Counted from the first letter of the stretch, positions 12,245 through 52,274 are shown. The stretch is 64,000 nucleotides of DNA from IMGVR_UViG_3300015265_000001:124001-188000, one strand, 5' to 3'. Notes: generated by a model from the sequence alone, not told the origin. Made by a program: numbers and translations.

Positions 12245-14566
12245 ATGATTAAACCAACAAACCCAGCTGCTGTGCAGATACCAGATGGGAACAACATGGG
12301 GATGAACAATCCCATGAACCCAATGAATCGCACAGGTTACAACACCCCGGGAGCGCAACAATCCAACCTTTCCCCCGGGGATGTCATCCGCAACATCATG
12401 TCGCAAAACCTGAACAGTAACAATGGTACTGGCGGTGGTTTTAACTGGGGTAACGTTGGTGGTGGTCTCTATGAAGACGAGGCACTCCGCTCGCTGCGCA
12501 CCAGTCAGGAAAGCGACCCAACCAGCAACGCCTATCTGATCGATCGGGTAGCTGGTGCAATGCAAATGTTTCTGCAACAAGTTTACCACCGTGCAGGTCC
12601 TTTCTTCGAAGAGTACCGCAAAGCCCGTGAAGACTTCCGTCTGAACGAGATGCAGCAGGTTGACGAAATCCGTAATGCCTATATTGAAGACGTGTGTAAA
12701 CAACACGAATTCACCCGCATCATTGCAATCAATGCCATGCCGTTCTTTGGTAAGGGTCTGATTGAATTGCTGCGGAATGGTAACCGGGATCAGCTGCAAC
12801 AGGCGGAGTACCTGAACACGGCGTTTATTGCTTGTCGCAACATTTTGTTCTTTGAAATGATCAACTGGCTGATGAAGTCGCCAAACGGCCGACGCTACAC
12901 CAATCGGCTGACTAAAGCTATTCAGGTGAAAATCAGTAACCTGGAAAACTTTAAGGAAGCGGCTGCTGCTGTATACGACCTCTTTAACCAGACGTCGCCA
13001 TACAACAACCTGGAGTTCAAACGTCCTGAGTCGACCCGTACCGATTACAACATGCTTTACGGTCCGGCGTCTGAATATGTACAGCGTTCGTTTGAGCCGC
13101 AGGTGGTTCCATCGGCAGCGTATCAAGATGAAGCCATGCGCGACATCTATCAGATGATCAATAATAACGCAAACACCCGGGGCCAGTTCCACCGACCGAC
13201 CCAGGACAAATCACTTGTGATTGGAGGTGAGATTATGAAGAGTTGGGATGAGGTACGAGGTGACTTCAACAACCTGACCCCAGACAACCGTAGCGAGTTC
13301 CGACTCAGCCGGTTCTTTTACAACATCGGTAAACCAAATCACTACTTCATCGCGGAGAGTGACTGGAAGAAGATCCAACACGCCTATCGGCGCCATGAAG
13401 AACAGAAGGCAGAAGAAACGGTCCTCCAGGGCTGCTTCCGTATTGTCATTATCGATCTCGACGGCGACGGTGGCTGGTTCAGTACTATCGTTCGCAAAGA
13501 GGGCCTCGATATGCAAACTGTCCTCACGGACCCAGCTAAATTGCTACCCCTGCTGGAAAACCCTGACGAGTTGGATGACTCCTGGGTTGTTAAGCCGTTC
13601 CCGCTGGAAGACGTTGTGGTCGAGAAGACCATGGACATTCCAATCGAAACCGTCGAGAAGATGGAAAAAGCCGTTCCGCTCATCGCAGTTGCAGAGCCGA
13701 TCGTCAGCAACTCCAGTCGTCAACTGGAAAGCACCATCGACACCGTCAACGGTCGTCTTGCATCCCACTTCACCAAAGTCAACGCCGTGGGCTTCCACGC
13801 TGTTAACTGGGACACGTACATCTGCAAGAGCAAGGAAGAAAAAGACACGCTGTACGGTGATCTGACGTTCCTGTTCAAGGACAACGACACTCGTGCAAGC
13901 TTCGTCAATGCTGTAGCAGCGGTTAATCGTTATGGCGAGCAGAAACGTGTAAGCGGTGAACTGATCAAGTTCATCGGTGATCATCTGACGCAAGTCATCA
14001 ACAACTGGCTCATTAACTGCGCGGGCTACAACCCGAACAAGAACGGCCACGGTCATCTGTCGGTTAACAACATCCTGACTGATTACCGTCCGCTGATCGA
14101 CTGGCTGAAAGAGCGTGATCCAGAAACTGCTCTGCACCTGCTGGAAGTAGATCGTGCAAACTACCTCAACGAGGCGGTGCGCATGTTCGACTACAACAAC
14201 CCGTACGTGCTGGCAGAAGGTCAAGAGCCGTCGGCAATTGATCTGCTCAAGACCGAACTGGAACTGACTGTTGGTCGTCACATGTATGTCAATGTGATCA
14301 ACAAGCGGACGGGTCCAGCGTACGTTGAAGCTAACGTACCGGTGCGCATCAAACGCAGCAAGTGGCCGGAATACTTCAAGATGATTGAAGACGGTTTCGA
14401 TGAAACCATGACGGAAGATGATGACGTCGCCGTGACTGACAAACTGCTGCGCTTCTCTGAAAGCGGCGGTATGTGGCTGTTCAGTTATTCCACGATCGAT
14501 CGTAACGTTGCAACTCTGCGTTTCGTATCGCGTGAAAAGCCGCTCTGCTTGTTGTCGCTGAGTTAA
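12245..14566 (+). CDS. Large conserved hypothetical protein with Asn/Met/Gly-rich disordered N-terminus
   Basis: 773 aa, AGGAG RBS. Confidence 0.6.
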   Translation: MIKPTNPAAVQIPDGNNMGMNNPMNPMNRTGYNTPGAQQSNLSPGDVIRNIMSQNLNSNNGTGGGFNWGNVGGGLYEDEALRSLRTSQESDPTSNAYLIDRVAGAMQMFLQQVYHRAGPFFEEYRKAREDFRLNEMQQVDEIRNAYIEDVCKQHEFTRIIAINAMPFFGKGLIELLRNGNRDQLQQAEYLNTAFIACRNILFFEMINWLMKSPNGRRYTNRLTKAIQVKISNLENFKEAAAAVYDLFNQTSPYNNLEFKRPESTRTDYNMLYGPASEYVQRSFEPQVVPSAAYQDEAMRDIYQMINNNANTRGQFHRPTQDKSLVIGGEIMKSWDEVRGDFNNLTPDNRSEFRLSRFFYNIGKPNHYFIAESDWKKIQHAYRRHEEQKAEETVLQGCFRIVIIDLDGDGGWFSTIVRKEGLDMQTVLTDPAKLLPLLENPDELDDSWVVKPFPLEDVVVEKTMDIPIETVEKMEKAVPLIAVAEPIVSNSSRQLESTIDTVNGRLASHFTKVNAVGFHAVNWDTYICKSKEEKDTLYGDLTFLFKDNDTRASFVNAVAAVNRYGEQKRVSGELIKFIGDHLTQVINNWLINCAGYNPNKNGHGHLSVNNILTDYRPLIDWLKERDPETALHLLEVDRANYLNEAVRMFDYNNPYVLAEGQEPSAIDLLKTELELTVGRHMYVNVINKRTGPAYVEANVPVRIKRSKWPEYFKMIEDGFDETMTEDDDVAVTDKLLRFSESGGMWLFSYSTIDRNVATLRFVSREKPLCLLSLS

Positions 14567-14591: not shown

Positions 14592-14641
14592 GTAACCTAC
14601 CGGGGATTTACCCGGTAGGTTACGCCTATTTCTTTTTTTTT
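14592..14641 (+). terminator. Intrinsic terminator
   Basis: GTAACCTACCGGG-GATTTA-CCCGGTAGGTTAC followed by a long T-run. Confidence 0.85.
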
Positions 14642-14646
14642 GATTT

Positions 14647-14690
14647 TTTAAGATACAGAGTTTCTCACGTCTATATTACTTGGGTGATTA
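14647..14690 (+). promoter_or_regulatory. Extended early promoter, copy 1
   Basis: TTTAAGATACAG-N12-CTATATTAC-nTGnGTGATTA; 36/44 identical to 50617-50660. Confidence 0.75.
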
Positions 14691-14735
14691 AGACAATTAA
14701 GTCTTTCATACTTAACCCCAATGGGAGTAACAAAC

Positions 14736-15068
14736 ATGACTTCTTTCAATGCTGCTGAACGCGCCGCCGCTGCACAATCTTTCCGTGGTGTGCGTGACGA
14801 TGGTGTACGTATCGGTCAAATCGCTGGTGTTGCTGGTGCACTCCTCGGCGCAGCAGCTTGCGTTAATCAGGGCAGTTCTCTGGCTAGCGGTCTGGTAGGT
14901 GGCTTGGCAGGCAGTGTTGCCGGCTACGCTGTGGGTACCCTCTGGGGTGTGGCCGAAGTTAACGCCACTGGCAAGATCATCTCTGGCACCATGTCCGGCC
15001 TGTTCGGCGTGGGTGTAGCCAGCACGGTCTGCTCTATCGTGGACTGCTTCGTAAACGAGCCCAAGTAA
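14736..15068 (+). CDS. Glycine-zipper membrane protein (110 aa)
   Basis: GxxxG arrays in three hydrophobic segments; GGAG RBS favours the 14736 start; homologous to the C-terminus of 50720-51856. Confidence 0.75.
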   Translation: MTSFNAAERAAAAQSFRGVRDDGVRIGQIAGVAGALLGAAACVNQGSSLASGLVGGLAGSVAGYAVGTLWGVAEVNATGKIISGTMSGLFGVGVASTVCSIVDCFVNEPK

Positions 15069-15085
15069 TAGGGGTTCGATGAATG

Positions 15086-15117
15086 AATAAAGGGAGCCTC
15101 GGTTCCCTTTATTTTTT
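15086..15117 (+). terminator. Intrinsic terminator
   Basis: AATAAAGGGAGC-CTCG-GTTCCCTTTATT followed by TTTT. Confidence 0.8.
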
Positions 15118-15138
15118 GTCCTTTGCGAGGATATAAAC

Positions 15139-15504
15139 ATGTTACTCAAACTTCATCCGCAGTCAGTAATGGGCATACCTGCGATTGATCAGATCATTGA
15201 TTACTTCCAGGGTTTAATAGTTACAGGGGCCTGGCCTGCTGACATTCGTTGCACGCGGGATATTATCACTGAACTGGACATTGTAGTAAGTGAGAGCGAT
15301 TTCGCCAACACACTGAATACCCACCACGCGTTCCTCTATGTAGGAACTCCTCAGGCGCTCCCCAGGACGTTTGCAAGCTTCTATAGACACCAACCCTTCA
15401 AGGACTGGGTGATCCTCCTTAAACCCAAGGATAATCACCTTGCTGATCCGGTGTATATTTTCTCTAAAGATAGTACACCACCTTCTCACCCTACGCTTCA
15501 TTAG
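15139..15504 (+). CDS. Small protein with nucleotidyltransferase-like motif
   Basis: LIVTGA...RDIITELDIVVSESDF parallels LSAGA...RDETNDLDVDVLPGVF of 43033-43473; GAGGA RBS. Confidence 0.45.
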   Translation: MLLKLHPQSVMGIPAIDQIIDYFQGLIVTGAWPADIRCTRDIITELDIVVSESDFANTLNTHHAFLYVGTPQALPRTFASFYRHQPFKDWVILLKPKDNHLADPVYIFSKDSTPPSHPTLH

Positions 15505-15513
15505 GAGAATTGC

Positions 15514-16098
15514 ATGACTGATTTACCAGAAAAGAACTACAAGCATTTGACCGATGAAGACCTGGGTATTCTCCTGGGCGGTTATCGCGTCATTAAGTTC
15601 AAGGACGACCCCAAAGAACTTAAAGGTGTAGATGTACCTACCGGTCTGGAACTGGTCTACGAGATTCAACGTCGGTTAAAGAAGTCGGGACCTAACCTCA
15701 GCTGGGATCAAGCGGTAGAACGTCGTCAATCCCCTACGCCAGATTTGTTGGAGTTCGCACTCCCGCAGATCATGCCGTTTCCGGATAAGGTTCTTCAAAC
15801 TACGCCTGAACAAATGCGCCGGACATTTGAAACGATGTATGAAAAATTGGTGGTCAGTAATAACCTCCCGGATTACTGGCCTTCCCTTGGTGAGGCGTCG
15901 CATATGTTCTCCGTCTTCCTTATGGCTGGTATCGACACGTTAGCGAGAACTGGACTGCTCCCTAGCGATTGTTGCGTTGTCTTTAGTAAAGAAACCAACC
16001 CAGTTCTTATGGAAATCAATAAGGAGCGGGCGTTAAAGTGTCTTAAACCTATCTTCTGCTTCTTGGCGAAGAAAGGTGAATTGAAGGAAGTTATTTGA
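15514..16098 (+). CDS. Hypothetical protein sharing an N-terminal module with 16199-16831
   Basis: 194 aa, AGGAG RBS. Confidence 0.65.
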   Translation: MTDLPEKNYKHLTDEDLGILLGGYRVIKFKDDPKELKGVDVPTGLELVYEIQRRLKKSGPNLSWDQAVERRQSPTPDLLEFALPQIMPFPDKVLQTTPEQMRRTFETMYEKLVVSNNLPDYWPSLGEASHMFSVFLMAGIDTLARTGLLPSDCCVVFSKETNPVLMEINKERALKCLKPIFCFLAKKGELKEVI

Positions 16099-44314: not shown

Positions 44315-46245
44315 ATGCCTATGAGGAGATGAAAGCGCTCCATGACGAGATTGCTCGTCTCAACACTGAGTTCCATATGCAGAACAAGGAACCCATCCCA
44401 AACGCTGAGTTCGACAAGAAGGTATTGCGGTTCGAAGAACTGACAGAGCTCTATCCGGACATTGCTCGTCACTTGGTGGGGGACGAAGCCCCAGTTACCA
44501 TGGCCAACCCCATTACGGCCCTAGAGCTGGTCGAGTTCAAAGAGCCAATGCTCAGTCTGAAAAAGGCATTGAGCATTGAGGCCCTGGATAAATGGCGCGA
44601 CAAACTCCCGCCCGGCACAATCGTTATCTACGAACTGAAGCTGGATGGTTTAGCGTTGGATCTGCTGTATGAGAACCGTAAGCTGTTTCGGATGTGTACA
44701 CGTCGAGATGGGTTGTTCGGTGAGGATGTCACTCACTCGGCCAACCTGTTTAGCAATGTGCCTCTGACGCTTCCTATGCACTTCCCTGAGACGTTTTCTA
44801 TTCGGGGTGAAGCGGTATTGCCATTTGCTGACTTCCTCGCCTATAACGAGGCTGTAGAGAAGCCGATGGTCACTCCGCGTAATGCGGCAAGTGGATGGGT
44901 GCGCACCAGTCGCGGTAACCAGAATCCTGAAACCATTGGTAAGTTGAAGTTCTTTGCTTATGGTTCCAGCGAGCGGTTTGATTGTGAGCTCTACATGGAC
45001 TTACGCACTGTTTGGCGTGAGGCTGGTTTCGATGTGGCTCCTGTGTTGTCCCTGGAAGATCTGAAGAGCGGTGAACGCGATCTATATCTGCCAACAGACG
45101 GGGTGGTTGGTAAGGTCAACAGCTTTGCCGAACAAGACCGCTTGGGGGAGACCAACAAGTACCCTAACTGGGGTATCGCTTACAAGTATCCGGATGAAGA
45201 AGTCGAAGCGGCTTACGACACCACTATCTGGAAGACAGGTAAGACAGGGCGCGTTAACCCAACGATCATCTATCATCCGGTTAAGGTAGGTGGAGTGACC
45301 TGTAGTCGAGCAAGCATTGATAACTATCACCAGTTCATGGCCTTAGGACTGCGTGAGGACTCGACCCTGGCCGTTCGTCGCAATAACGATGTTATCCCCC
45401 GGGTGCATCGTGTCGTTGATCCTGGAGCAGGAGAGCGTGTTAAAGCACCGGATACCTGTCCGAGTTGTGGAACCACTCTGCGACTCAAGACCAGTGATGC
45501 TAGCGCATTCCTTTACTGTGATAACGTAGCGGAATGTCCGAGTCAGTTGCTGAACCGTTGCCTGTCGTTTGTCAGCCGGGGTTGTCTCGATATTGACGGC
45601 CTAGGTCCAGTCTTGTTGTCTGAGCTGATCGAGCGAGAAGACATCGAGTATCCAGCGGATATCCTGTTCTTGGAGCCGACGTATATCCATGCGTCTATCT
45701 GGGACAACATTCGCAAGGTCGACCACATACCCATGCACAAGGCTATCTTCGCGATGGGTTTGCCGGGTATTGAAGTCATCCGCGCCAAGAAACTTGCTAC
45801 GGCCATGAACCAGGCCGGTGTTCGTCCTTTCCCGGAAGAAATCATCCACTGGCTGAGCAATAAGGATAACCTGAAAAAGATCAAAGGGTTTGGTAACAAG
45901 CTCGCTGATCCAATTGCCAGAGCTATGGAGACGGACGCTATTTTGAATAACGCAAACCGGTTATTCAAAAGGGTTTATCCGTTTTACAAGGAGGAAGCAA
46001 CCGAACAAAAGATTTGTATCACCGGCGAAGTGGGCCTTGCTCGTGAAGGCTTGAAGGACTCCCTGGAACTGGTGGGTATCGAGTTGGTGGATAACCTCAC
46101 CAAAGACTGCCAGTTGCTCCTAGTGGGGGAGAAACCAGGAGAGAAGAAACAGTTAAAAGCAACCGCGCTGGGTATCCCTATGGTAACTATTGCCAGGGTT
46201 TCCAGTATTGAAGATTTGGTCGACCAGATCAATAACCGCAAATAA
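44311..46245 (+). CDS. ligA: NAD+-dependent DNA ligase
   Basis: KLDG adenylation motif, RGE, DGVV, AYK, OB-fold GKTG, CPSC...C...C zinc finger, C-terminal BRCT. Confidence 0.95.
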   Translation: MNAYEEMKALHDEIARLNTEFHMQNKEPIPNAEFDKKVLRFEELTELYPDIARHLVGDEAPVTMANPITALELVEFKEPMLSLKKALSIEALDKWRDKLPPGTIVIYELKLDGLALDLLYENRKLFRMCTRRDGLFGEDVTHSANLFSNVPLTLPMHFPETFSIRGEAVLPFADFLAYNEAVEKPMVTPRNAASGWVRTSRGNQNPETIGKLKFFAYGSSERFDCELYMDLRTVWREAGFDVAPVLSLEDLKSGERDLYLPTDGVVGKVNSFAEQDRLGETNKYPNWGIAYKYPDEEVEAAYDTTIWKTGKTGRVNPTIIYHPVKVGGVTCSRASIDNYHQFMALGLREDSTLAVRRNNDVIPRVHRVVDPGAGERVKAPDTCPSCGTTLRLKTSDASAFLYCDNVAECPSQLLNRCLSFVSRGCLDIDGLGPVLLSELIEREDIEYPADILFLEPTYIHASIWDNIRKVDHIPMHKAIFAMGLPGIEVIRAKKLATAMNQAGVRPFPEEIIHWLSNKDNLKKIKGFGNKLADPIARAMETDAILNNANRLFKRVYPFYKEEATEQKICITGEVGLAREGLKDSLELVGIELVDNLTKDCQLLLVGEKPGEKKQLKATALGIPMVTIARVSSIEDLVDQINNRK

Positions 46246-48472: not shown

Positions 48473-49408
48473 ATGGGAACTGATATGGAATTTAAGCCGG
48501 TCTTGTGTATCTACCACAAAGACTGCCTGGATGGCATCGGAGCGGCTTGGGTCGTTTGGCGTCACTTCAAGAACATGGGCATTGAGATCGAACTCGTTGC
48601 CGCGAACTACAAAGACAAGATGCCCGACGTAGATGGCAAGGTGGTTTACGTAGTGGATTTCAGTTATCCTCGCCCTCTCATGGAAGACATGCTGCGTCGT
48701 GCCCATGATGTGGTGGTACTGGATCACCACACGTCGGCGAAGAAAAACCTCGAAGGACTCTTTGTGGTAGACGAGAGCCATTCGGGGGCAATGCTGGCCT
48801 GGAAGTATTTCAACCATACTCCTCCGCCACAAGGTTTGTTGTACGTTGAAGATCGTGACCTGTGGAAGTTCAAATACCCAGAGACCAATAACTGGGTAAC
48901 CGCGGCGTTCTCGTATCCTTTCAACGTCGAGCAGTTCGATGCGTTGATGAATACTGATCCATTGGACCTTATTCATGAAGGCAAAATACTGTTGCGTAAA
49001 CATCAGCAGGATTGTTCGCGAGTAGCCCTGAACACCCGCACGATGAAATGCATGGGCTATGAAGTACCTGTGGTCAACGCTAACATCTTCTTTGCGTCTG
49101 ACCTGGGTCACCTCCTTTCTGCAAACGCCCCGTTCGCGCTGATCTACATGGATCTGCCTGGCGGGCGTAAGTATTCCATTCGTTGTCAGAAAGACACTGA
49201 CTTCGATGTATCGCTTATCGCCGAGTACTTTGGTGGTGGCGGTCATAAAGACGCGTCCGGTTTCACGATCGCTTATGACGACAAGCGCTTTGCTCGCAGC
49301 CATGAGGTGCTTGATTACACCGTCTGGGAGAAGATCAAGGGAACCTGCGGCTACATGATGTACAGCCTCAAAACTGAACTCAAAGCAATTGCTGGGATCT
49401 TCAAATGA
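48473..49408 (+). CDS. DHH/DHHA1 phosphoesterase
   Basis: HKDCLDG, VDF, LDHH, SGA, DRDLW and GGGGHKDASG motifs. Confidence 0.9.
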   Translation: MGTDMEFKPVLCIYHKDCLDGIGAAWVVWRHFKNMGIEIELVAANYKDKMPDVDGKVVYVVDFSYPRPLMEDMLRRAHDVVVLDHHTSAKKNLEGLFVVDESHSGAMLAWKYFNHTPPPQGLLYVEDRDLWKFKYPETNNWVTAAFSYPFNVEQFDALMNTDPLDLIHEGKILLRKHQQDCSRVALNTRTMKCMGYEVPVVNANIFFASDLGHLLSANAPFALIYMDLPGGRKYSIRCQKDTDFDVSLIAEYFGGGGHKDASGFTIAYDDKRFARSHEVLDYTVWEKIKGTCGYMMYSLKTELKAIAGIFK

Positions 49409-49698
49409 AAAACAAGGCAGTTAAGTTCTTTCGTTATGCCGGTGTCTGGCGTTATAAGGAAATCGGTAAGGATGTAGCAGACGCAGTTGATACCCGGATG
49501 TTGGAAACCGTTCTGGGTGTTATGGGCGGGCCTTTGGTGTATGTCTGCCGCGATACCGGTAAACCAGAGTTTACCAAACTGCGCATTGAAGTACGTAACG
49601 GCTTTATCATCCGGGCTTCTGTAGCCGAAGACGATAACGTTCCTTTTGCAGAAGGTAAAGAGGTGGAAGAATTCTTCATCCGCCCATTGATGAATTAA
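49405..49698 (+). CDS. Hypothetical protein
   Basis: 97 aa, ATGA overlap. Confidence 0.6.
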   Translation: MKNKAVKFFRYAGVWRYKEIGKDVADAVDTRMLETVLGVMGGPLVYVCRDTGKPEFTKLRIEVRNGFIIRASVAEDDNVPFAEGKEVEEFFIRPLMN

Positions 49699-49709
49699 GG
49701 AAACCAGGT

Positions 49710-49877
49710 ATGGAAAGCGAATATGTGTTTGCTATCTCGGACGAAGGTACCCTGTGTCCAGTCCCAGGCAATGAGGCGCTTTACGAAGCAGTTAAAGACG
49801 CCTGCCATCGTTTGAGGCCACGCGTCGGTTCCGGTAAGACCATGGTACGCGTGGAAGTTAAACGTATCAAGGACTAA
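49710..49877 (+). CDS. Small hypothetical protein (55 aa), not in ORF track
   Basis: MESEYVFAISDEGTLCPVPG...KRIKD; AAGGA RBS; fills the gap exactly. Confidence 0.6.
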   Translation: MESEYVFAISDEGTLCPVPGNEALYEAVKDACHRLRPRVGSGKTMVRVEVKRIKD

Positions 49878-49882
49878 CCACA

Positions 49883-50332
49883 ATGGAACTCGATTACAGT
49901 TATGTGAGCGTGCAGCTTAAACCAGAGCTACAGGCGGACATCATCAACGCTATGGTGTTGGCGGGTGTTTCTCCGGAAGCTAAGCACGAGCTGCACTGCA
50001 CGATGGTTTACGATAAGCGTGACATCGACAAACCGCTGTGCAACCTGATGCCTCCATCTAAGGAATTCAAGGCGAACGTTATCTCCTTGGAAACCCTGGG
50101 TGATGGCATGGTGTTTCATCTTACCAGCACTGATATGCTGGAAGAGTTCCGCCGGTTGAAAGATGAGGGTTACGTGCATTCGTACGGAACACCTTTGTTC
50201 CACATGTCGTTGAAGTATGATTTCGATAAACACGACATCCTCGCCATCAACCATGCGTTCGCTGATTGGGGTGGCCGTACGTTGATCTTCCACAACGAAC
50301 AGTTCGGCATCAAGAAACCCAAGAAGAAGTAA
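49883..50332 (+). CDS. acb1: 2H phosphoesterase, Acb1 (T4 gp57B)-like
   Basis: 149 aa; LHCTMVYD and G..HSY...FHMSLKYD match T4 Acb1 IHSTICYS and G..HDF...PHITLSYN in order and approximate spacing (recalled sequence). Confidence 0.7.
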   Translation: MELDYSYVSVQLKPELQADIINAMVLAGVSPEAKHELHCTMVYDKRDIDKPLCNLMPPSKEFKANVISLETLGDGMVFHLTSTDMLEEFRRLKDEGYVHSYGTPLFHMSLKYDFDKHDILAINHAFADWGGRTLIFHNEQFGIKKPKKK

Positions 50333-50339
50333 CCCGGTA

Positions 50340-50389
50340 CTACTCCTACTCCCTTTACGGGGAGTAGGAGTAGGCTACCTTTATTTTTT
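50340..50389 (+). terminator. Intrinsic terminator
   Basis: CTACTCCTACTCCCT-TTAC-GGGGAGTAGGAGTAG followed by a T-run. Confidence 0.85.
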
Positions 50390-50409
50390 GCATTTTAACT
50401 TACAGCTTA

Positions 50410-50427
50410 TTTCAAGGCTACATTATT
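50410..50427 (+). promoter_or_regulatory. Early phage promoter
   Basis: TTTCAAGGCTACATTATT; variant of TTTGAAACCTACATTATT. Confidence 0.65.
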
Positions 50428-50467
50428 CGTGTGTATAAACAACATACTTCTCTTTGGGAGAAACATA

Positions 50468-50608
50468 ATGAAAGCTGCCTTCGTGCTTGTAGGTCTGATT
50501 TGCGTTGTAGTGTCCTGCGGCCTGATCGCAGTACATCATGAACCTTCCGATGCTGGCAATAGCTCCGAGTACATTACCCGGGGCATTTTGAACGCTACTA
50601 AACACTAA
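50468..50608 (+). CDS. 46-aa membrane peptide or small lipoprotein, not in ORF track
   Basis: MKAAFVLVGLICVVVS-C lipobox-like signal; GGGAG RBS. Confidence 0.6.
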   Translation: MKAAFVLVGLICVVVSCGLIAVHHEPSDAGNSSEYITRGILNATKH

Positions 50609-50616
50609 CGGGTAAA

Positions 50617-50660
50617 TTTAAGATACAGTCGATTTCATGTCTATATTACCTGTGTGATTA
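50617..50660 (+). promoter_or_regulatory. Extended early promoter, copy 2
   Basis: 36/44 identical to 14647-14690, ungapped. Confidence 0.75.
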
Positions 50661-50719
50661 TTCAATAAAGATTATTCGCAATGACGAATGATCTAACCTC
50701 ACTTGAAAGGAGTACCGCT

Positions 50720-51856
50720 ATGAACACTAAGAACGTACAAGTTGAAAACACCGCATCCATGCTGGTAGCGGTAGTCTCCAACCTTCGTACTGAAAGTGCA
50801 CCGGAGGCCACTCAAATGGCCTATGTGAAATCGGTGATGCTGGACCAATCCCAGGTTCCTACCCGGGATCGTCAAGTGGTGCTGCAACTGGTGAACAACC
50901 AGCTCGGCACCAAATGGACTTTCAACCAGATCAAGAAAGCTGGTGAGTTTGTCCCAGGTGATACCGGCCCGGTCAAAGTTCAAGAACTGAACGGCGTCTC
51001 CCAGGTCAACGTCGGCGGCCAGCCAAATGAAGCTTCCTTCGTGGAGCCCAAGCTGACTGCCGATCACGCTCACCAACAATCGACTTCCCAGTCGACCACC
51101 ACTGCTCCTGACCACAACGGTCAAACCACCTCCAACGCAAACGAACAGGATGACAACACCATGAACGCACAAGCCAACATGAACAACGACACCGCCCAAT
51201 CCGTACAGGGTTTCGAAGTCGCCATGATCGCCGTCGGCCGCACCACCCCAGAACAGCGCGCTGCTGCCTGGATCGCTTACCTGGCTACCTCCCCTGAGCT
51301 GACCGCCAAGTGGGACGCCTTCCTGCTGGCCGCTGACAAAGCCACGTCGTTCGACGAAAACTTCATCACCTTCAGCGACAACCTGGGCGAAGAAGAAGGC
51401 AGCCAAGCTGTTCACGGCTTCATGCGCTGGTGTGCAGCCAACCAGCCGAAAGACGATGCTCACTACGCCGACAAGTCGCGTTTCAGCCTGATGGGTGATC
51501 GTGACGAAGGCGTTCGCACCAGCTGGATTGCAGCCGGTAGCGCAGTGATCGGCGGCGGCATGGAAATGTTCGCTCGCGGTGGTCTGACCGCTGGTTCGGC
51601 AATCGGTACTCTGGCAGGTTCCGTCGGCGCGTTCTTCGCCGGTGAACAAGTCGACGAGCACGTCGAAAGCCAATTCGGTCGTTACGTGGTCGGCGGCATG
51701 ATCGGTCTGGCCCTGGGTGGCGCAGGTTCGGCCCTGGGTCGCAGCCTGCTGCCTGGCAACAGCCTGATCAACATGGGTACCGCTGAAGTGGTTCCTGCTG
51801 CGATCGAAGTTCTGCCTGCCCCACAACAAGGCCAGGTCGGCTTCTTCGGCCTGTAA
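50720..51856 (+). CDS. Multidomain protein with C-terminal glycine-zipper membrane domain
   Basis: 378 aa from ATG 50720 (AAGGAG RBS); Q/T/N linker; C-terminal domain homologous to 14736-15068; strong codon bias. Confidence 0.75.
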   Translation: MNTKNVQVENTASMLVAVVSNLRTESAPEATQMAYVKSVMLDQSQVPTRDRQVVLQLVNNQLGTKWTFNQIKKAGEFVPGDTGPVKVQELNGVSQVNVGGQPNEASFVEPKLTADHAHQQSTSQSTTTAPDHNGQTTSNANEQDDNTMNAQANMNNDTAQSVQGFEVAMIAVGRTTPEQRAAAWIAYLATSPELTAKWDAFLLAADKATSFDENFITFSDNLGEEEGSQAVHGFMRWCAANQPKDDAHYADKSRFSLMGDRDEGVRTSWIAAGSAVIGGGMEMFARGGLTAGSAIGTLAGSVGAFFAGEQVDEHVESQFGRYVVGGMIGLALGGAGSALGRSLLPGNSLINMGTAEVVPAAIEVLPAPQQGQVGFFGL

Positions 51857-51869
51857 CCTGCCGTAGCTG

Positions 51870-51904
51870 TAAGGGGGATCTCCGGATCCCCTTATTTCTT
51901 ATTT
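51870..51904 (+). terminator. Intrinsic terminator
   Basis: GGGGGATC-TCCG-GATCCCCT followed by TATTTCTT. Confidence 0.75.
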
Positions 51905-51956: not shown

Positions 51957-52274
51957 ATGAACAACGAATTTAAAGTCCGCGATAAAGTTATTGTGGCAAA
52001 CGAAGAAAACCCCAACGCCAACCGCATGGTTGAGCTGGTGGCCTATGTACAACCCGGCAATACCGTGTTCCACTACGACAGCTACTTCACTGCTGGTAAT
52101 GAAGGTGGCTGGATCGTAACTGCTGAAGACCTGGTTCACAAGACCAACTTCCGCGGTGAGATCATCAGCGACTTCGCTCTGGTGAAGCCATCTGAGATCC
52201 GTGAACTGGCTGCCGAGGATCTCGCCTTCCTCCCAAAGCTTAAAGTGAACAACCGCTACATGAACGCAGCCTAA
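51957..52274 (+). CDS. Small beta-barrel (SH3/KOW-like) protein, paralog of 52814-53140
   Basis: FKVRDKVIV...MVEL..YV.PG...GGWIVTAEDL. Confidence 0.65.
   Translation: MNNEFKVRDKVIVANEENPNANRMVELVAYVQPGNTVFHYDSYFTAGNEGGWIVTAEDLVHKTNFRGEIISDFALVKPSEIRELAAEDLAFLPKLKVNNRYMNAA

What the first reader, a model, noticed from the sequence alone, without database searches (positions are those of the whole stretch)
14647..15068. Two distant homologous glycine-zipper genes share a private 44-bp extended promoter (partner at 50617-51856)
Seen: 14647-14690 and 50617-50660 align ungapped at 36/44 (TTTAAGATACAG-N12-CTATATTAC-nTGnGTGATTA). The upstream TTTAAGATACAG box and downstream GTGATTA are absent from the other four early promoters. 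Seen: the downstream proteins are homologous (RDDGVRIGQIA/RDEGVRTSWIA, GLAGSV/TLAGSV, GKIISGTMSGL/GRYVVGGMIGL). One is a stand-alone 110-aa domain and the other carries it after about 270 aa. Both genes have MCP-like codon bias and their own terminator. Inference: a co-regulated, highly expressed early inner-membrane module. It could be a two-component oligomeric pore or membrane-remodelling system for superinfection exclusion, or act on the early-infection vesicle known in nucleus-forming jumbo phages. Promoter conservation exceeds coding conservation, which suggests selection rather than duplication alone.
Basis: partly seen in the sequence, partly recalled or inferred. Interest (0 to 1): 0.75.

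Follow-up and report, generated by a model that had tools for sequence, protein, structure and literature searches.

The report
Full-length early promoter, jumbo phage
The 44-bp element is the complete form of the early promoter of an uncultured nucleus-forming jumbo phage related to Pseudomonas phage EL; it precedes four genes per genome rather than two, and two of those genes are remote paralogues with a three-helix glycine-zipper domain of unknown function that phages EL and RisingSun also carry.

Summary
The sequence observation is real: 36/44 identity, with exact 12-, 9- and 7-nt boxes and none expected by chance. "Private to two genes" is wrong. The whole 226,985-bp genome has four copies plus a degenerate fifth, all on the + strand. 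Four near-complete relatives have the same number. Two copies precede unrelated genes.

The element matches the published three-part early promoter that nucleus-forming jumbo phages use for their virion RNA polymerase: a -30 box, a T-rich -20, a CTATATTAC -10 and a GTG start. Its last 7 nt (GTGATTA) are probably transcribed. They would form the 5' arm of a stem-loop starting at +1.

The boxes stay 25-28/28 identical in orthologues whose coding DNA is only 53-80% identical.

The two proteins are probable remote homologues, with eight glycine columns and an RDxG motif in register. The family has 82 clusters at 50% identity, in short and long forms. It includes EL gp082/gp127 and RisingSun gp122, and probably RisingSun gp87. 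It was not detected in phiKZ, Goslar or 201phi2-1.

Early timing, membrane location and any pore, exclusion or vesicle role remain inference. Interest is moderate.

The parts
14592..14623 (+). Intrinsic-terminator-like hairpin (13 bp) plus T-run ending the upstream 773-aa gene. It insulates the short gene's transcription unit.
   Evidence: conserved in relatives
14647..14658 (+). -30 box TTTAAGATACAG of class-I early promoter, copy B
   Evidence: Invariant in 5 orthologous sites. It aligns with the upstream block of the 201phi2-1 early-promoter consensus, which lies at the same 12-nt spacing.
14659..14683 (+). T-rich -20 region (TTTCTCA), extended -10 core CTATATTAC (14671-14679) and a 4-nt spacer
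   Evidence: literature
14684..14709 (+). Predicted transcript start (G at 14684, inferred) and 5'-terminal stem-loop: GUGA / AAGAC-loop-GUCUU / UCAU.
   Evidence: 9 pairs, 17 sequences, 1 compensatory pair; z = -2.7 against shuffles, paired from nt 1
14736..15068 (+). Short glycine-zipper gene (110 aa) with Shine-Dalgarno GGGAG at 14723-14727. Predicted as three helices after an RDDGVR motif.
   Evidence: Syntenic 118-aa counterpart in EL is gp082.
15085..15114 (+). Terminator-like hairpin plus T-run ending the monocistronic short-gene unit
50394..50437 (+). Weaker early promoter: -30-like TTTAACTTACAG, core CTACATTAT at 50418-50426, then GTGTATA
50468..50608 (+). Conserved 46-aa hydrophobic peptide with a lipobox-like VVSC. 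It lies between the weak promoter and the class-I promoter.
   Evidence: conserved in five of the seven relatives' loci checked, including one distant relative
50617..50653 (+). Class-I early promoter, copy C: -30 box 50617-50628, T-rich -20, core CTATATTAC 50641-50649, 4-nt spacer
50654..50719 (+). Predicted 5'UTR of the long gene. It starts GTGATTA, has a conserved 10-bp hairpin at 50669-50694, and Shine-Dalgarno AAGGAG at 50707-50712.
   Evidence: 10 pairs, 3 with compensatory changes across 8 sequences
50720..51856 (+). Long gene (378 aa): two helical N-terminal domains, a disordered linker, and the glycine-zipper three-helix domain at residues ~250-348 (nt 51467-51763)
   Evidence: EL gp127 is the syntenic homologue.
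51872..51893 (+). Terminator-like hairpin plus T-run after the long gene

Best explanation
The 44-bp element is not a private regulatory tag. It is the full-length form of the early promoter that this phage's virion RNA polymerase is expected to use.

Layout:
- a -30 box (TTTAAGATACA[G/T]);
- 12 nt containing the T-rich -20 motif;
- an extended -10 (CTATATTAC);
- 4 nt;
- a GTG where transcription probably starts.

The remaining ATTA is already RNA. Together with the following ~20 nt it forms a stem-loop that begins at the first nucleotide of the mRNA. A stem-loop in that position typically protects a transcript from 5'-end-dependent decay.

Promoter, 5' stem-loop, good ribosome-binding site and terminator together make a compact high-output early expression cassette. 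Each genome of this clade has four such cassettes. Two of them drive the short (110 aa) and long (378 aa) members of one remote paralogous family. Its shared domain is three Gly/Ala-rich helices preceded by an RD-x-G motif. Both proteins are probably made early and in quantity.

Shown: the sequence architecture, copy number, conservation, paralogy and phylogenetic spread.

Inferred: the start site, early timing, the stabilising role of the stem-loop, and that the domain is membrane-associated and self-assembling.
For: Copy number:
- Four full copies in the genome, and four in each of four near-complete relatives, always on one strand.
- The downstream genes fall into unrelated families.

Promoter identity:
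- The layout matches published early-promoter consensus sequences of related phages, for example 201phi2-1 TTAWTAVAA_HYWTTTRARR_BTATATTACDWHDGTG and EL WTTTYAAACCTACATTATY.
- Published descriptions give conserved -10, -20 and -30 regions, with an AT-rich motif centred near -10.
- The genome encodes a chimallin homologue (48% identity to those of EL and RisingSun) and an RNA polymerase beta-like protein.
- About 17 early-type cores exist, all on the + strand, with graded -30 boxes. EL and RisingSun show the same picture.

Selection:
- The three boxes are 28/28 identical where coding DNA is 71-80% identical, and 25-26/28 where it is 53-59% identical.
- The spacers differ by site and follow orthology.

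Stem-loop:
- All four class-I transcripts pair from nt 1 (z = -2.1 to -3.0). Only two of the other 14 pair from nt 1, both weakly (z = -0.5, -0.6).
- One compensatory variant keeps the stem: AAGATC/GATCTT.

Proteins:
- BLASTP E = 6e-5; Smith-Waterman z = 7 with 0 of 2000 shuffles reaching it; hhalign E = 6e-5.
- An HMM of the long-form domain scores 4 of 6 short proteins above all 2000 composition-matched shuffles.
- Eight invariant glycine columns plus RD-x-G lie in register.
- 82 clusters at 50% identity, in two architectures.
- EL has both forms in the same synteny, each behind an extended promoter.
- RisingSun has the long form (gp122) and a glycine-rich 123-aa protein (gp87) in the short-gene position, each behind an extended promoter. 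The profile did not detect gp87.
Against: - No transcript data exist. The only RNA-labelled public runs holding related sequence look like DNA and gave no 5' ends. The start site, early timing and strength are therefore inferred by analogy.
- The -30 boxes are not just strong versus weak. A second, unrelated conserved box (TGTTKGGGTWAG) sits at the same position before chimallin and one other gene. The box may therefore encode class-specific regulation rather than sheer strength.
- Covariation for the class-I stem-loop is thin (1 compensatory pair of 9). Its conservation could reflect DNA or protein recognition rather than RNA structure.
- The short gene's codon adaptation is only moderately above the median.
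- Homology of the two proteins rests on weak scores (hhalign probability 65%).
- Hydropathy is borderline for transmembrane helices (19-residue Kyte-Doolittle maxima 1.83 and 1.41). Model confidence is low (pLDDT 55 and ~67).
Confidence: 0.7

Rival explanations
1. One reading: the extended element is a dedicated co-regulatory signal that ties the two glycine-zipper genes into one two-component module.
For: - Both genes carry the element in every relative examined, including distant ones with 33-41% protein identity.
- In RisingSun the only two genome matches (up to 2 mismatches) to a lineage-adapted pattern are exactly its two glycine-zipper genes.
- EL's two genes also have it, the long one in degenerate form.
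Against: - In this genome and four relatives the identical cassette also precedes two unrelated gene families, which themselves vary between relatives.
- Related -30 boxes occur at other early promoters here and in EL and RisingSun.
- The RisingSun pattern was derived from the short-gene promoters, so that count is biased.
- The complex prediction gave no answer.
Confidence: 0.12
2. The -30 boxes define discrete regulons within the early class. Class I (TTTAAGATACA) and class II (TGTTKGGGTWAG) would be read by different specificity determinants, such as a polymerase subunit or packaged factor, or by an early repressor or activator. That would give different timing or shut-off rather than different strength.
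For: - Two unrelated boxes sit at the same 12-nt spacing from the core. Each is conserved at orthologous sites in relatives.
- Class II precedes chimallin and the gene with the highest codon adaptation.
Against: - Intermediate, degenerate class-I boxes exist. This fits a graded affinity element.
- No candidate factor was identified and there are no expression data.
Confidence: 0.25
3. The element is a host sigma-70 promoter (TTAAGA, 18 nt, TATATT) used before or alongside the phage polymerase.
For: The consensus scan flags both sites at 9/12 matches.
Against: - The match is weak, with a suboptimal 18-nt spacer.
- Conservation covers 11-12 nt of the box and the full CTATATTAC plus GTG. This fits the phage motif, not the hexamers.
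- In EL, a Pseudomonas phage, the box is TTTAACTTACAG and the core CTAAATAAT.
- Published work describes early transcription in this phage family as independent of host polymerase.
Confidence: 0.05
4. The similarity is only shared descent. A promoter-plus-leader cassette was recently copied or gene-converted between sites, with no selection on the extended parts.
For: - Three of the four copies share about 66 bp, including the leader hairpin.
- A soil-metagenome contig matches window 14647-14712 alone, inside another gene context.
Against: - The variable spacers are site-specific and track orthology across genomes, so the copies have evolved separately for a long time.
- The boxes stay 25-28/28 identical at 53-80% coding identity.
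- The architecture persists in EL and RisingSun.
Confidence: 0.08

Closest known systems
Early (virion RNA polymerase) promoters of nucleus-forming jumbo phages: phiKZ TATATTAC, the 201phi2-1 three-part motif, and the predicted EL, OBP and N1M2 motifs
   Same: - Extended -10 core (C)TATATTAC, a T-rich -20 (TTTYA) and a conserved -30 block 12 nt upstream of the core, followed by N4-5 and GTG.
- All copies lie on one strand, before presumed early operons, and often directly after a terminator.
   Different: - The -30 box sequence is lineage-specific.
- It comes in at least two discrete conserved classes.
- Class I is coupled to a conserved 5'-terminal stem-loop. I did not find such a coupling described in the papers read.
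- Nothing here is mapped experimentally.
Pseudomonas phage EL gp082 (118 aa) and gp127 (404 aa); Erwinia phage RisingSun gp87 and gp122; two short forms in Klebsiella phage Miami (RefSeq locus-tag numbering). All are annotated hypothetical.
   Same: - Same two architectures.
- Same synteny: the short gene follows the 773-aa gene homologue, and the long gene follows DHH phosphoesterase plus a 2H/'RNA ligase' gene.
- The EL and RisingSun genes have the same kind of extended promoter.
- The profile gives E = 1.5e-23 for the EL long form, 7.6e-9 for the EL short form and 1.1e-6 for RisingSun gp122.
- The viral structure library also returns EL Q2Z0Z9 and a Joad protein.
   Different: - Only about 20-45% identity.
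- RisingSun gp87 is linked by synteny and composition only; the profile did not detect it.
- EL's long-form promoter has a degenerate -30 box.
- None of these proteins has a described function, so they name the family but do not explain it.
5'-terminal stem-loops that stabilise bacterial mRNAs (the ompA-leader type; named from my own knowledge, not tested here)
   Same: A stable hairpin that starts at or within a nucleotide or two of the predicted 5' end, on a short leader of a highly expressed gene.
   Different: - The 5' end is inferred, not mapped.
- The stem sequence is almost invariant, which could equally mean recognition by a protein or by the polymerase.
Glycine-zipper membrane proteins: Pfam Gly-zipper_2TM (Rick_17kDa_Anti), Gly-zipper_Omp and Gly-zipper_YMGG; glycine-zipper pore-forming or translocating effectors
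   Same: - Repeated small-xxx-small spacing on three Gly/Ala-rich helices.
- Language-model neighbours include Gly-zipper_Omp, YMGG, MamC and colicin clusters, at lead-only scores of 0.70-0.74.
   Different: - No Pfam model reaches significance (best E about 1).
- The conserved RD-x-G motif and the three-helix register are specific to this phage family.
- Hydropathy is borderline.
Early membrane proteins of T4 that block superinfection (Imm, Sp)
   Same: Small envelope-directed proteins made immediately after infection (background). Here the long gene is preceded by a conserved lipobox-like peptide gene with its own early promoter.
   Different: There is no sequence or fold relationship and no functional data. 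This is an analogy only.

Membership tests
Early promoter for the virion RNA polymerase of nucleus-forming jumbo phages | AT-rich extended -10 motif of TATATTAC type | tested here: met
   CTATATTAC is exact at all four class-I sites and five other sites, all on the + strand. Consensus.
Early promoter for the virion RNA polymerase of nucleus-forming jumbo phages | T-rich -20 element and conserved -30 region at fixed spacing | tested here: met
   TTTCA-type motif within the 12-nt spacer. The -30 box lies exactly 12 nt from the core in 22 sites across 6 genomes and in distant relatives. Compare the 201phi2-1 consensus.
Early promoter for the virion RNA polymerase of nucleus-forming jumbo phages | Genome belongs to a phage with chimallin and its own multisubunit RNA polymerase | tested here: met
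   The 672-aa protein is 48% identical to 'nuclear shell protein' of EL-like phages. PF00562 match above cut-off.
Early promoter for the virion RNA polymerase of nucleus-forming jumbo phages | Primary 5' end about 10 nt downstream of the motif centre, appearing early and independent of host polymerase | not testable with these tools
   Public runs holding the sequence are metagenomic DNA or DNA-like and gave no ends.
Pfam glycine-zipper families (PF05433, PF13488, PF13441) | Profile match above the curated cut-off | tested here: not met
   The best match among these three families is PF05433 at E = 1.4, about 7.5 bits against a cut-off of 24.2. PF13488 and PF13441 gave no match. No Pfam hit for the long protein.
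One paralogous domain family (short and long forms) | Similarity beyond composition, collinear over the whole domain | tested here: met
   - BLASTP 6e-5 with composition adjustment, in a 75-residue ungapped alignment; the Smith-Waterman alignment spans 84 residues; 0 of 2000 shuffles reach the score.
- hhalign 6e-5, probability 65%.
- HMM test against shuffles.
- Eight invariant Gly columns plus RD-x-G.
- Intermediates bridge the two forms.
- The strength is moderate, not decisive.
Integral inner-membrane protein | Hydrophobic helices long and hydrophobic enough to span a bilayer | tested here: inconclusive
   Three predicted helices of 19-29 residues in each protein. The 19-residue hydropathy maximum is 1.83 (short) and 1.41 (long), around or below the usual 1.6 threshold. 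No dedicated topology predictor was available.
Hetero-oligomeric two-component module | Predicted or measured interaction of the short protein with the long protein's domain | tested here: inconclusive
   The complex prediction returned 'no answer' (score 0.00, pLDDT below 50), which is not evidence either way.
Holin / pinholin | Late expression and linkage to an endolysin or spanin cassette | tested here: not met
   Both genes sit behind early-type promoters. No protein family library match indicating a lysis gene was found among the neighbours that were scanned (15139-15504, 15514-16098, 49883-50332, 51957-52274).
Host sigma-70 promoter | Good -35 and -10 hexamers at 16-18 nt | tested here: inconclusive
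   Only 9/12 with an 18-nt spacer. The conservation pattern fits the phage motif better.

The most novel reading that the evidence does not exclude
The early promoters of this phage lineage may be split into discrete regulons by interchangeable -30 boxes: class I before four cassette genes, class II before chimallin. The class-I regulon, with its conserved 5' stem-loop, would deliver a burst of a short plus long glycine-zipper pair that assembles in the membrane of the early-infection vesicle or the inner membrane. There it could form one of the still unidentified conduits for nucleotide import or mRNA export, or a block to superinfection.
Probability: 0.07. Interest if true: 0.85.

Novelty: new variant of a known kind. 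Interest (0 to 1): 0.4.

Why it matters
For annotation, it supplies a ready-made rule for finding the strongest early transcription units in EL-, RisingSun- and Miami-like jumbo phages and their many uncultured soil relatives. The rule is: -30 box, 12 nt, core, 4 nt, GTG, stem-loop.

For biology, it flags a conserved and completely uncharacterised pair of probably abundant early proteins. The pair is present in two cultured phages, EL and RisingSun, where it can be tested directly. The membrane stage of early infection in this phage family currently has no known phage-encoded membrane components (review read).

The existence of two discrete conserved -30 box classes suggests that early transcription in these phages is more finely partitioned than a single early class.

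For engineering, the cassette is a compact, insulated, polymerase-specific expression unit.

Tried and rejected
- **Nucleotide and protein BLAST against GenBank phages.** Both loci, both proteins and a distant family member gave no match. Relatives were reached only through profile searches, metagenome collections and synteny.
- **Public sequencing runs.** The RNA-labelled wastewater runs behave like DNA and cover only scraps. No 5' ends could be read.
- **Pfam, PHROGs and PDB sequence searches.** Nothing significant for either protein. The exception is PHROG 29858 (unknown function, E = 2.6e-4) for the long one.
- **Structure.** The short protein's model is too uncertain (pLDDT 55) to search with. 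The long protein's model only recovered uncharacterised proteins of related phages in the viral library.
- **Complex prediction** of the short protein with the long protein's domain gave no answer.
- **ESM Atlas neighbours.** All scores were below the level at which hits are more than leads.
- **The 773-aa neighbour as major capsid protein.** This is not established, so 'MCP-like codon bias' was re-expressed as CAI against that gene.
- **Supplementary TSS tables** of the 201phi2-1 and phiKZ transcriptome papers are not held. The start-site offset therefore rests on the papers' text.
- **Rejected: a link to RisingSun gp123.** That gene is annotated as a Cor exclusion protein. The gene downstream of the long gene here shows no similarity to it.
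- **Rejected: a third paralogue in this genome.** The profile finds only the two.

Full report
**1. What is in the sequence**

Window 14647-14690 and 50617-50660 align without gaps at 36/44. Three blocks are exact: TTTAAGATACAG, CTATATTAC and GTGATTA. The combined pattern hits only these two places in the window, and none of 100 dinucleotide-preserving shuffles gave a hit.

Each element lies before a gene with a good ribosome-binding site: the 110-aa gene at 14736-15068 and the 378-aa gene at 50720-51856. Each gene is followed by a hairpin plus T-run. The short gene is also preceded by the terminator of the upstream 773-aa gene, so it is a self-contained unit.

The upstream ATGs at 14721 and 50681 are not the real starts. 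The Shine-Dalgarno sequences precede 14736 and 50720, and some relatives lack the upstream ATG.

**2. The genome**

The window is positions 124001-188000 of a 226,985-bp virus record with terminal repeats, from a rhizosphere metagenome.

- It encodes a 672-aa protein 48% identical to the 'nuclear shell protein' (chimallin) of EL-like phages and RisingSun.
- It has a tubulin-like gene and a multisubunit RNA polymerase beta-like gene.

It is therefore an uncultured nucleus-forming jumbo phage. Its nearest cultured relatives are Pseudomonas phage EL and Erwinia phage RisingSun.

**3. The element is not private**

Genome-wide, the full element occurs four times, at 44439, 138647, 174617 and 225147, all on the + strand. 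A degenerate fifth copy sits at 202557. Each of four near-complete relatives from IMG/VR also has exactly four perfect copies on one strand.

The genes behind the copies are as follows:
- a ~300-aa protein; in some relatives only its 120-aa C-terminal domain, or an unrelated 141-aa protein;
- the short glycine-zipper protein;
- the long glycine-zipper protein;
- a 122-aa protein, or a 64-aa one in one relative.

The first and last families show no similarity to the glycine-zipper proteins and have no family assignment.

**4. What the element is**

Published work describes early promoters of this phage family as follows:
- an AT-rich, roughly 10-nt motif centred near -10;
- in phiKZ, an extended -10 plus a T-rich stretch upstream of -19;
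- in 201phi2-1, conservation at -10, -20 and -30.

A published table gives 201phi2-1 as TTAWTAVAA_HYWTTTRARR_BTATATTACDWHDGTG and EL as WTTTYAAACCTACATTATY.

The present element has the same layout. A box ends 12 nt before the core, a TTTCA-type motif lies in that spacer, then come CTATATTAC, four nucleotides and GTG. Right-aligned, ATACA of the box matches WTAVA of the 201phi2-1 upstream block.

A relaxed scan finds 15 such cores. Together with those at 202581, 225171 and 174641 this gives about 17, all on the + strand. Several carry weaker versions of the same box: TTTAACTTACAG at window 50394, plus GTTAACTTACAG, ATTAAGTTGTAG and ATTAAGTTATAA. EL and RisingSun show the same graded picture.

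A second, unrelated box (TGTTKGGGTWAG) occupies the same position before chimallin and a 146-aa gene. It is conserved at two sites per genome in three of four relatives. The -30 position therefore carries at least two discrete conserved classes.

**5. Selection**

For both genes, the 28 nt of the three blocks are 28/28 identical in orthologues with 71-80% coding-DNA identity. They are 25-26/28 identical in orthologues with 53-59% coding identity and 33-41% protein identity. Within the genome the two elements are 82% identical, while the aligned domain codons are 42% identical.

The spacers differ between sites but are similar between orthologous sites. The copies have therefore evolved separately under constraint rather than by recent copying.

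**6. The downstream 7 nt belong to the RNA**

Suppose transcription starts at the G of GTG. This is inferred from the motif being centred near -10 and from GTG being part of several published consensus sequences. Then three of the four transcripts begin with GUGA-UU-AAGAC-loop-GUCUU-UCAY, a nine-pair stem-loop that starts at nucleotide 1.

- All four class-I leaders pair from nt 1, with z = -2.1 to -3.0 against shuffles. Only two of the other 14 early leaders pair from nt 1, both weakly (z = -0.5, -0.6).
- One relative carries AAGATC/GATCTT, which keeps the stem. A distant relative of the short gene keeps AAGAC/GUCUU with a different loop.
- The long gene's leader has instead a conserved 10-bp hairpin at 50669-50694, with compensatory changes at three pairs across eight sequences.

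I read these as leader structures that raise output, most simply by protecting the 5' end. That role is inference. Near-invariance of the stem sequence would also fit recognition by a protein.

**7. The proteins**

Evidence bearing on homology:
- BLASTP with composition adjustment gives E = 6e-5 over 75 ungapped residues. The Smith-Waterman local alignment spans 84 residues.
- The Smith-Waterman score is seven standard deviations above 2000 shuffles.
- Profile-profile comparison gives E = 6e-5, with probability only 65%.
- An HMM built from long-form domains alone scores four of six short proteins above every one of 2000 composition-matched shuffles. It ranks the short gene second among all six-frame ORFs of the genome.
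- The joint alignment has eight invariant glycine columns and a nearly invariant G-x-R-D-x-G in register.

A profile search of 1.84 billion representatives finds 82 clusters at 50% identity. These are about 55 long forms (350-600 aa, domain C-terminal) and about 25 short forms (103-130 aa). The contigs checked for sampled members reach about 217-220 kb.

I conclude probable remote homology, not mere composition. Only these two copies exist in this genome.

AlphaFold predicts three helices for the domain in both proteins, at low confidence. For the long protein it predicts two confident helical N-terminal domains separated by a disordered linker. Hydropathy is borderline for membrane spanning, and no Pfam glycine-zipper model matches.

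**8. Cultured relatives**

- **EL.** The gene after the 773-aa homologue (gp081) is a 118-aa glycine-rich protein (gp082). It lies behind terminator, TTTAACTTACAG, N12, CTAAATAAT, N4, GTGAATA. The profile also finds EL gp127 (404 aa, E = 1.5e-23) after DHH phosphoesterase and a 2H/'RNA ligase' gene, the same synteny as window 48473-51856. It has a more degenerate box and again GTGAATA plus a hairpin.
- **RisingSun.** It has the long form gp122 (E = 1.1e-6) and a glycine-rich 123-aa protein, gp87, in the short-gene position. The profile did not detect gp87. Both lie behind extended promoters.
- **Miami.** It has two short forms.
- **Not detected** in phiKZ, Goslar, 201phi2-1 or FishSpeaker at this sensitivity.

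**9. What could not be settled**

- No transcript ends could be obtained.
- The interaction prediction gave no answer.
- Fold and language-model searches gave only leads.
- Membrane location, oligomerisation and any role in superinfection exclusion or at the early-infection vesicle remain hypotheses. A review states that the vesicle's channels are still unidentified.
- One piece of context fits an envelope role. A conserved 46-aa lipobox-like peptide gene with its own early promoter sits immediately upstream of the long gene.

**10. Verdict**

New here:
- the lineage-specific -30 box classes;
- the coupling of class I to a 5'-terminal stem-loop;
- the recognition of a conserved short/long paralogue pair, testable in EL and RisingSun.

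Interest is moderate.

Noticed in passing
genome 39409-39441 and 73995-74027 (outside the window; loci L033 and L032): A second conserved -30 box, TGTTKGGGTWAG, lies 12 nt upstream of the early core. It precedes the chimallin gene and a 146-aa gene with the highest codon adaptation in the genome (PHROG 13587). Two copies per genome occur in three of four relatives.
   Followed up: partly
window 50468-50608: A 46-aa hydrophobic peptide with a lipobox-like VVSC and a conserved EYITRGI motif. It has its own weaker early promoter (core at 50418) and lies directly upstream of the long glycine-zipper gene. It is conserved in five of the seven relatives' loci checked, including one distant relative.
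   Followed up: partly
window 49883-50332 and 48473-49408: A 149-aa 2H phosphoesterase matches the anti-CBASS Acb1 family (PF23474, 34.9 bits against a cut-off of 27). EL and RisingSun annotate the counterpart as 'RNA ligase'. It is preceded by a DHH-type protein, and the same gene order is conserved in EL gp125-gp127 and in distant metagenomic relatives.
   Followed up: partly
genome 44518-45405 (L029) and relatives L007, L014: The gene behind class-I copy A also exists in two architectures. It is ~296-304 aa here and in two relatives, but a 120-aa C-terminal-domain-only version in two others. One relative has an unrelated 141-aa gene at that slot, so the cassette looks like a landing pad for variable early genes.
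   Followed up: partly
window 12245-14566: The 773-aa gene upstream of the short gene is 37% identical to EL gp081 and belongs to PHROG 13213. It is 'hypothetical' in all 27 related GenBank records and has no PDB sequence match, so it should not be assumed to be the major capsid protein.
   Followed up: partly
window 14712-15149, minus strand: A 145-aa antisense ORF fully overlaps the short glycine-zipper gene and is longer than it. A length-based gene caller picks it in place of the real gene. It is probably spurious.
   Followed up: no
genome 202557-202600 (L031); EL 164017: The degenerate fifth copy (TTTAAGATGAGG ... CTATATTAC ... GTGTATC) precedes a conserved 187-aa gene. Relative G002 has the same degenerate copy (TTTAAGATAAGG, locus L023) before a homologous 187-aa gene, and EL has a similar box (TTTAACTTGAGG), which suggests an old, separately conserved variant.
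   Followed up: no
RisingSun 126344-126745 (L046): The gene just downstream of RisingSun's long glycine-zipper gene is annotated 'Cor superinfection exclusion protein'. The gene in the same position here (window 51957-52274) shows no similarity to it.
   Followed up: yes
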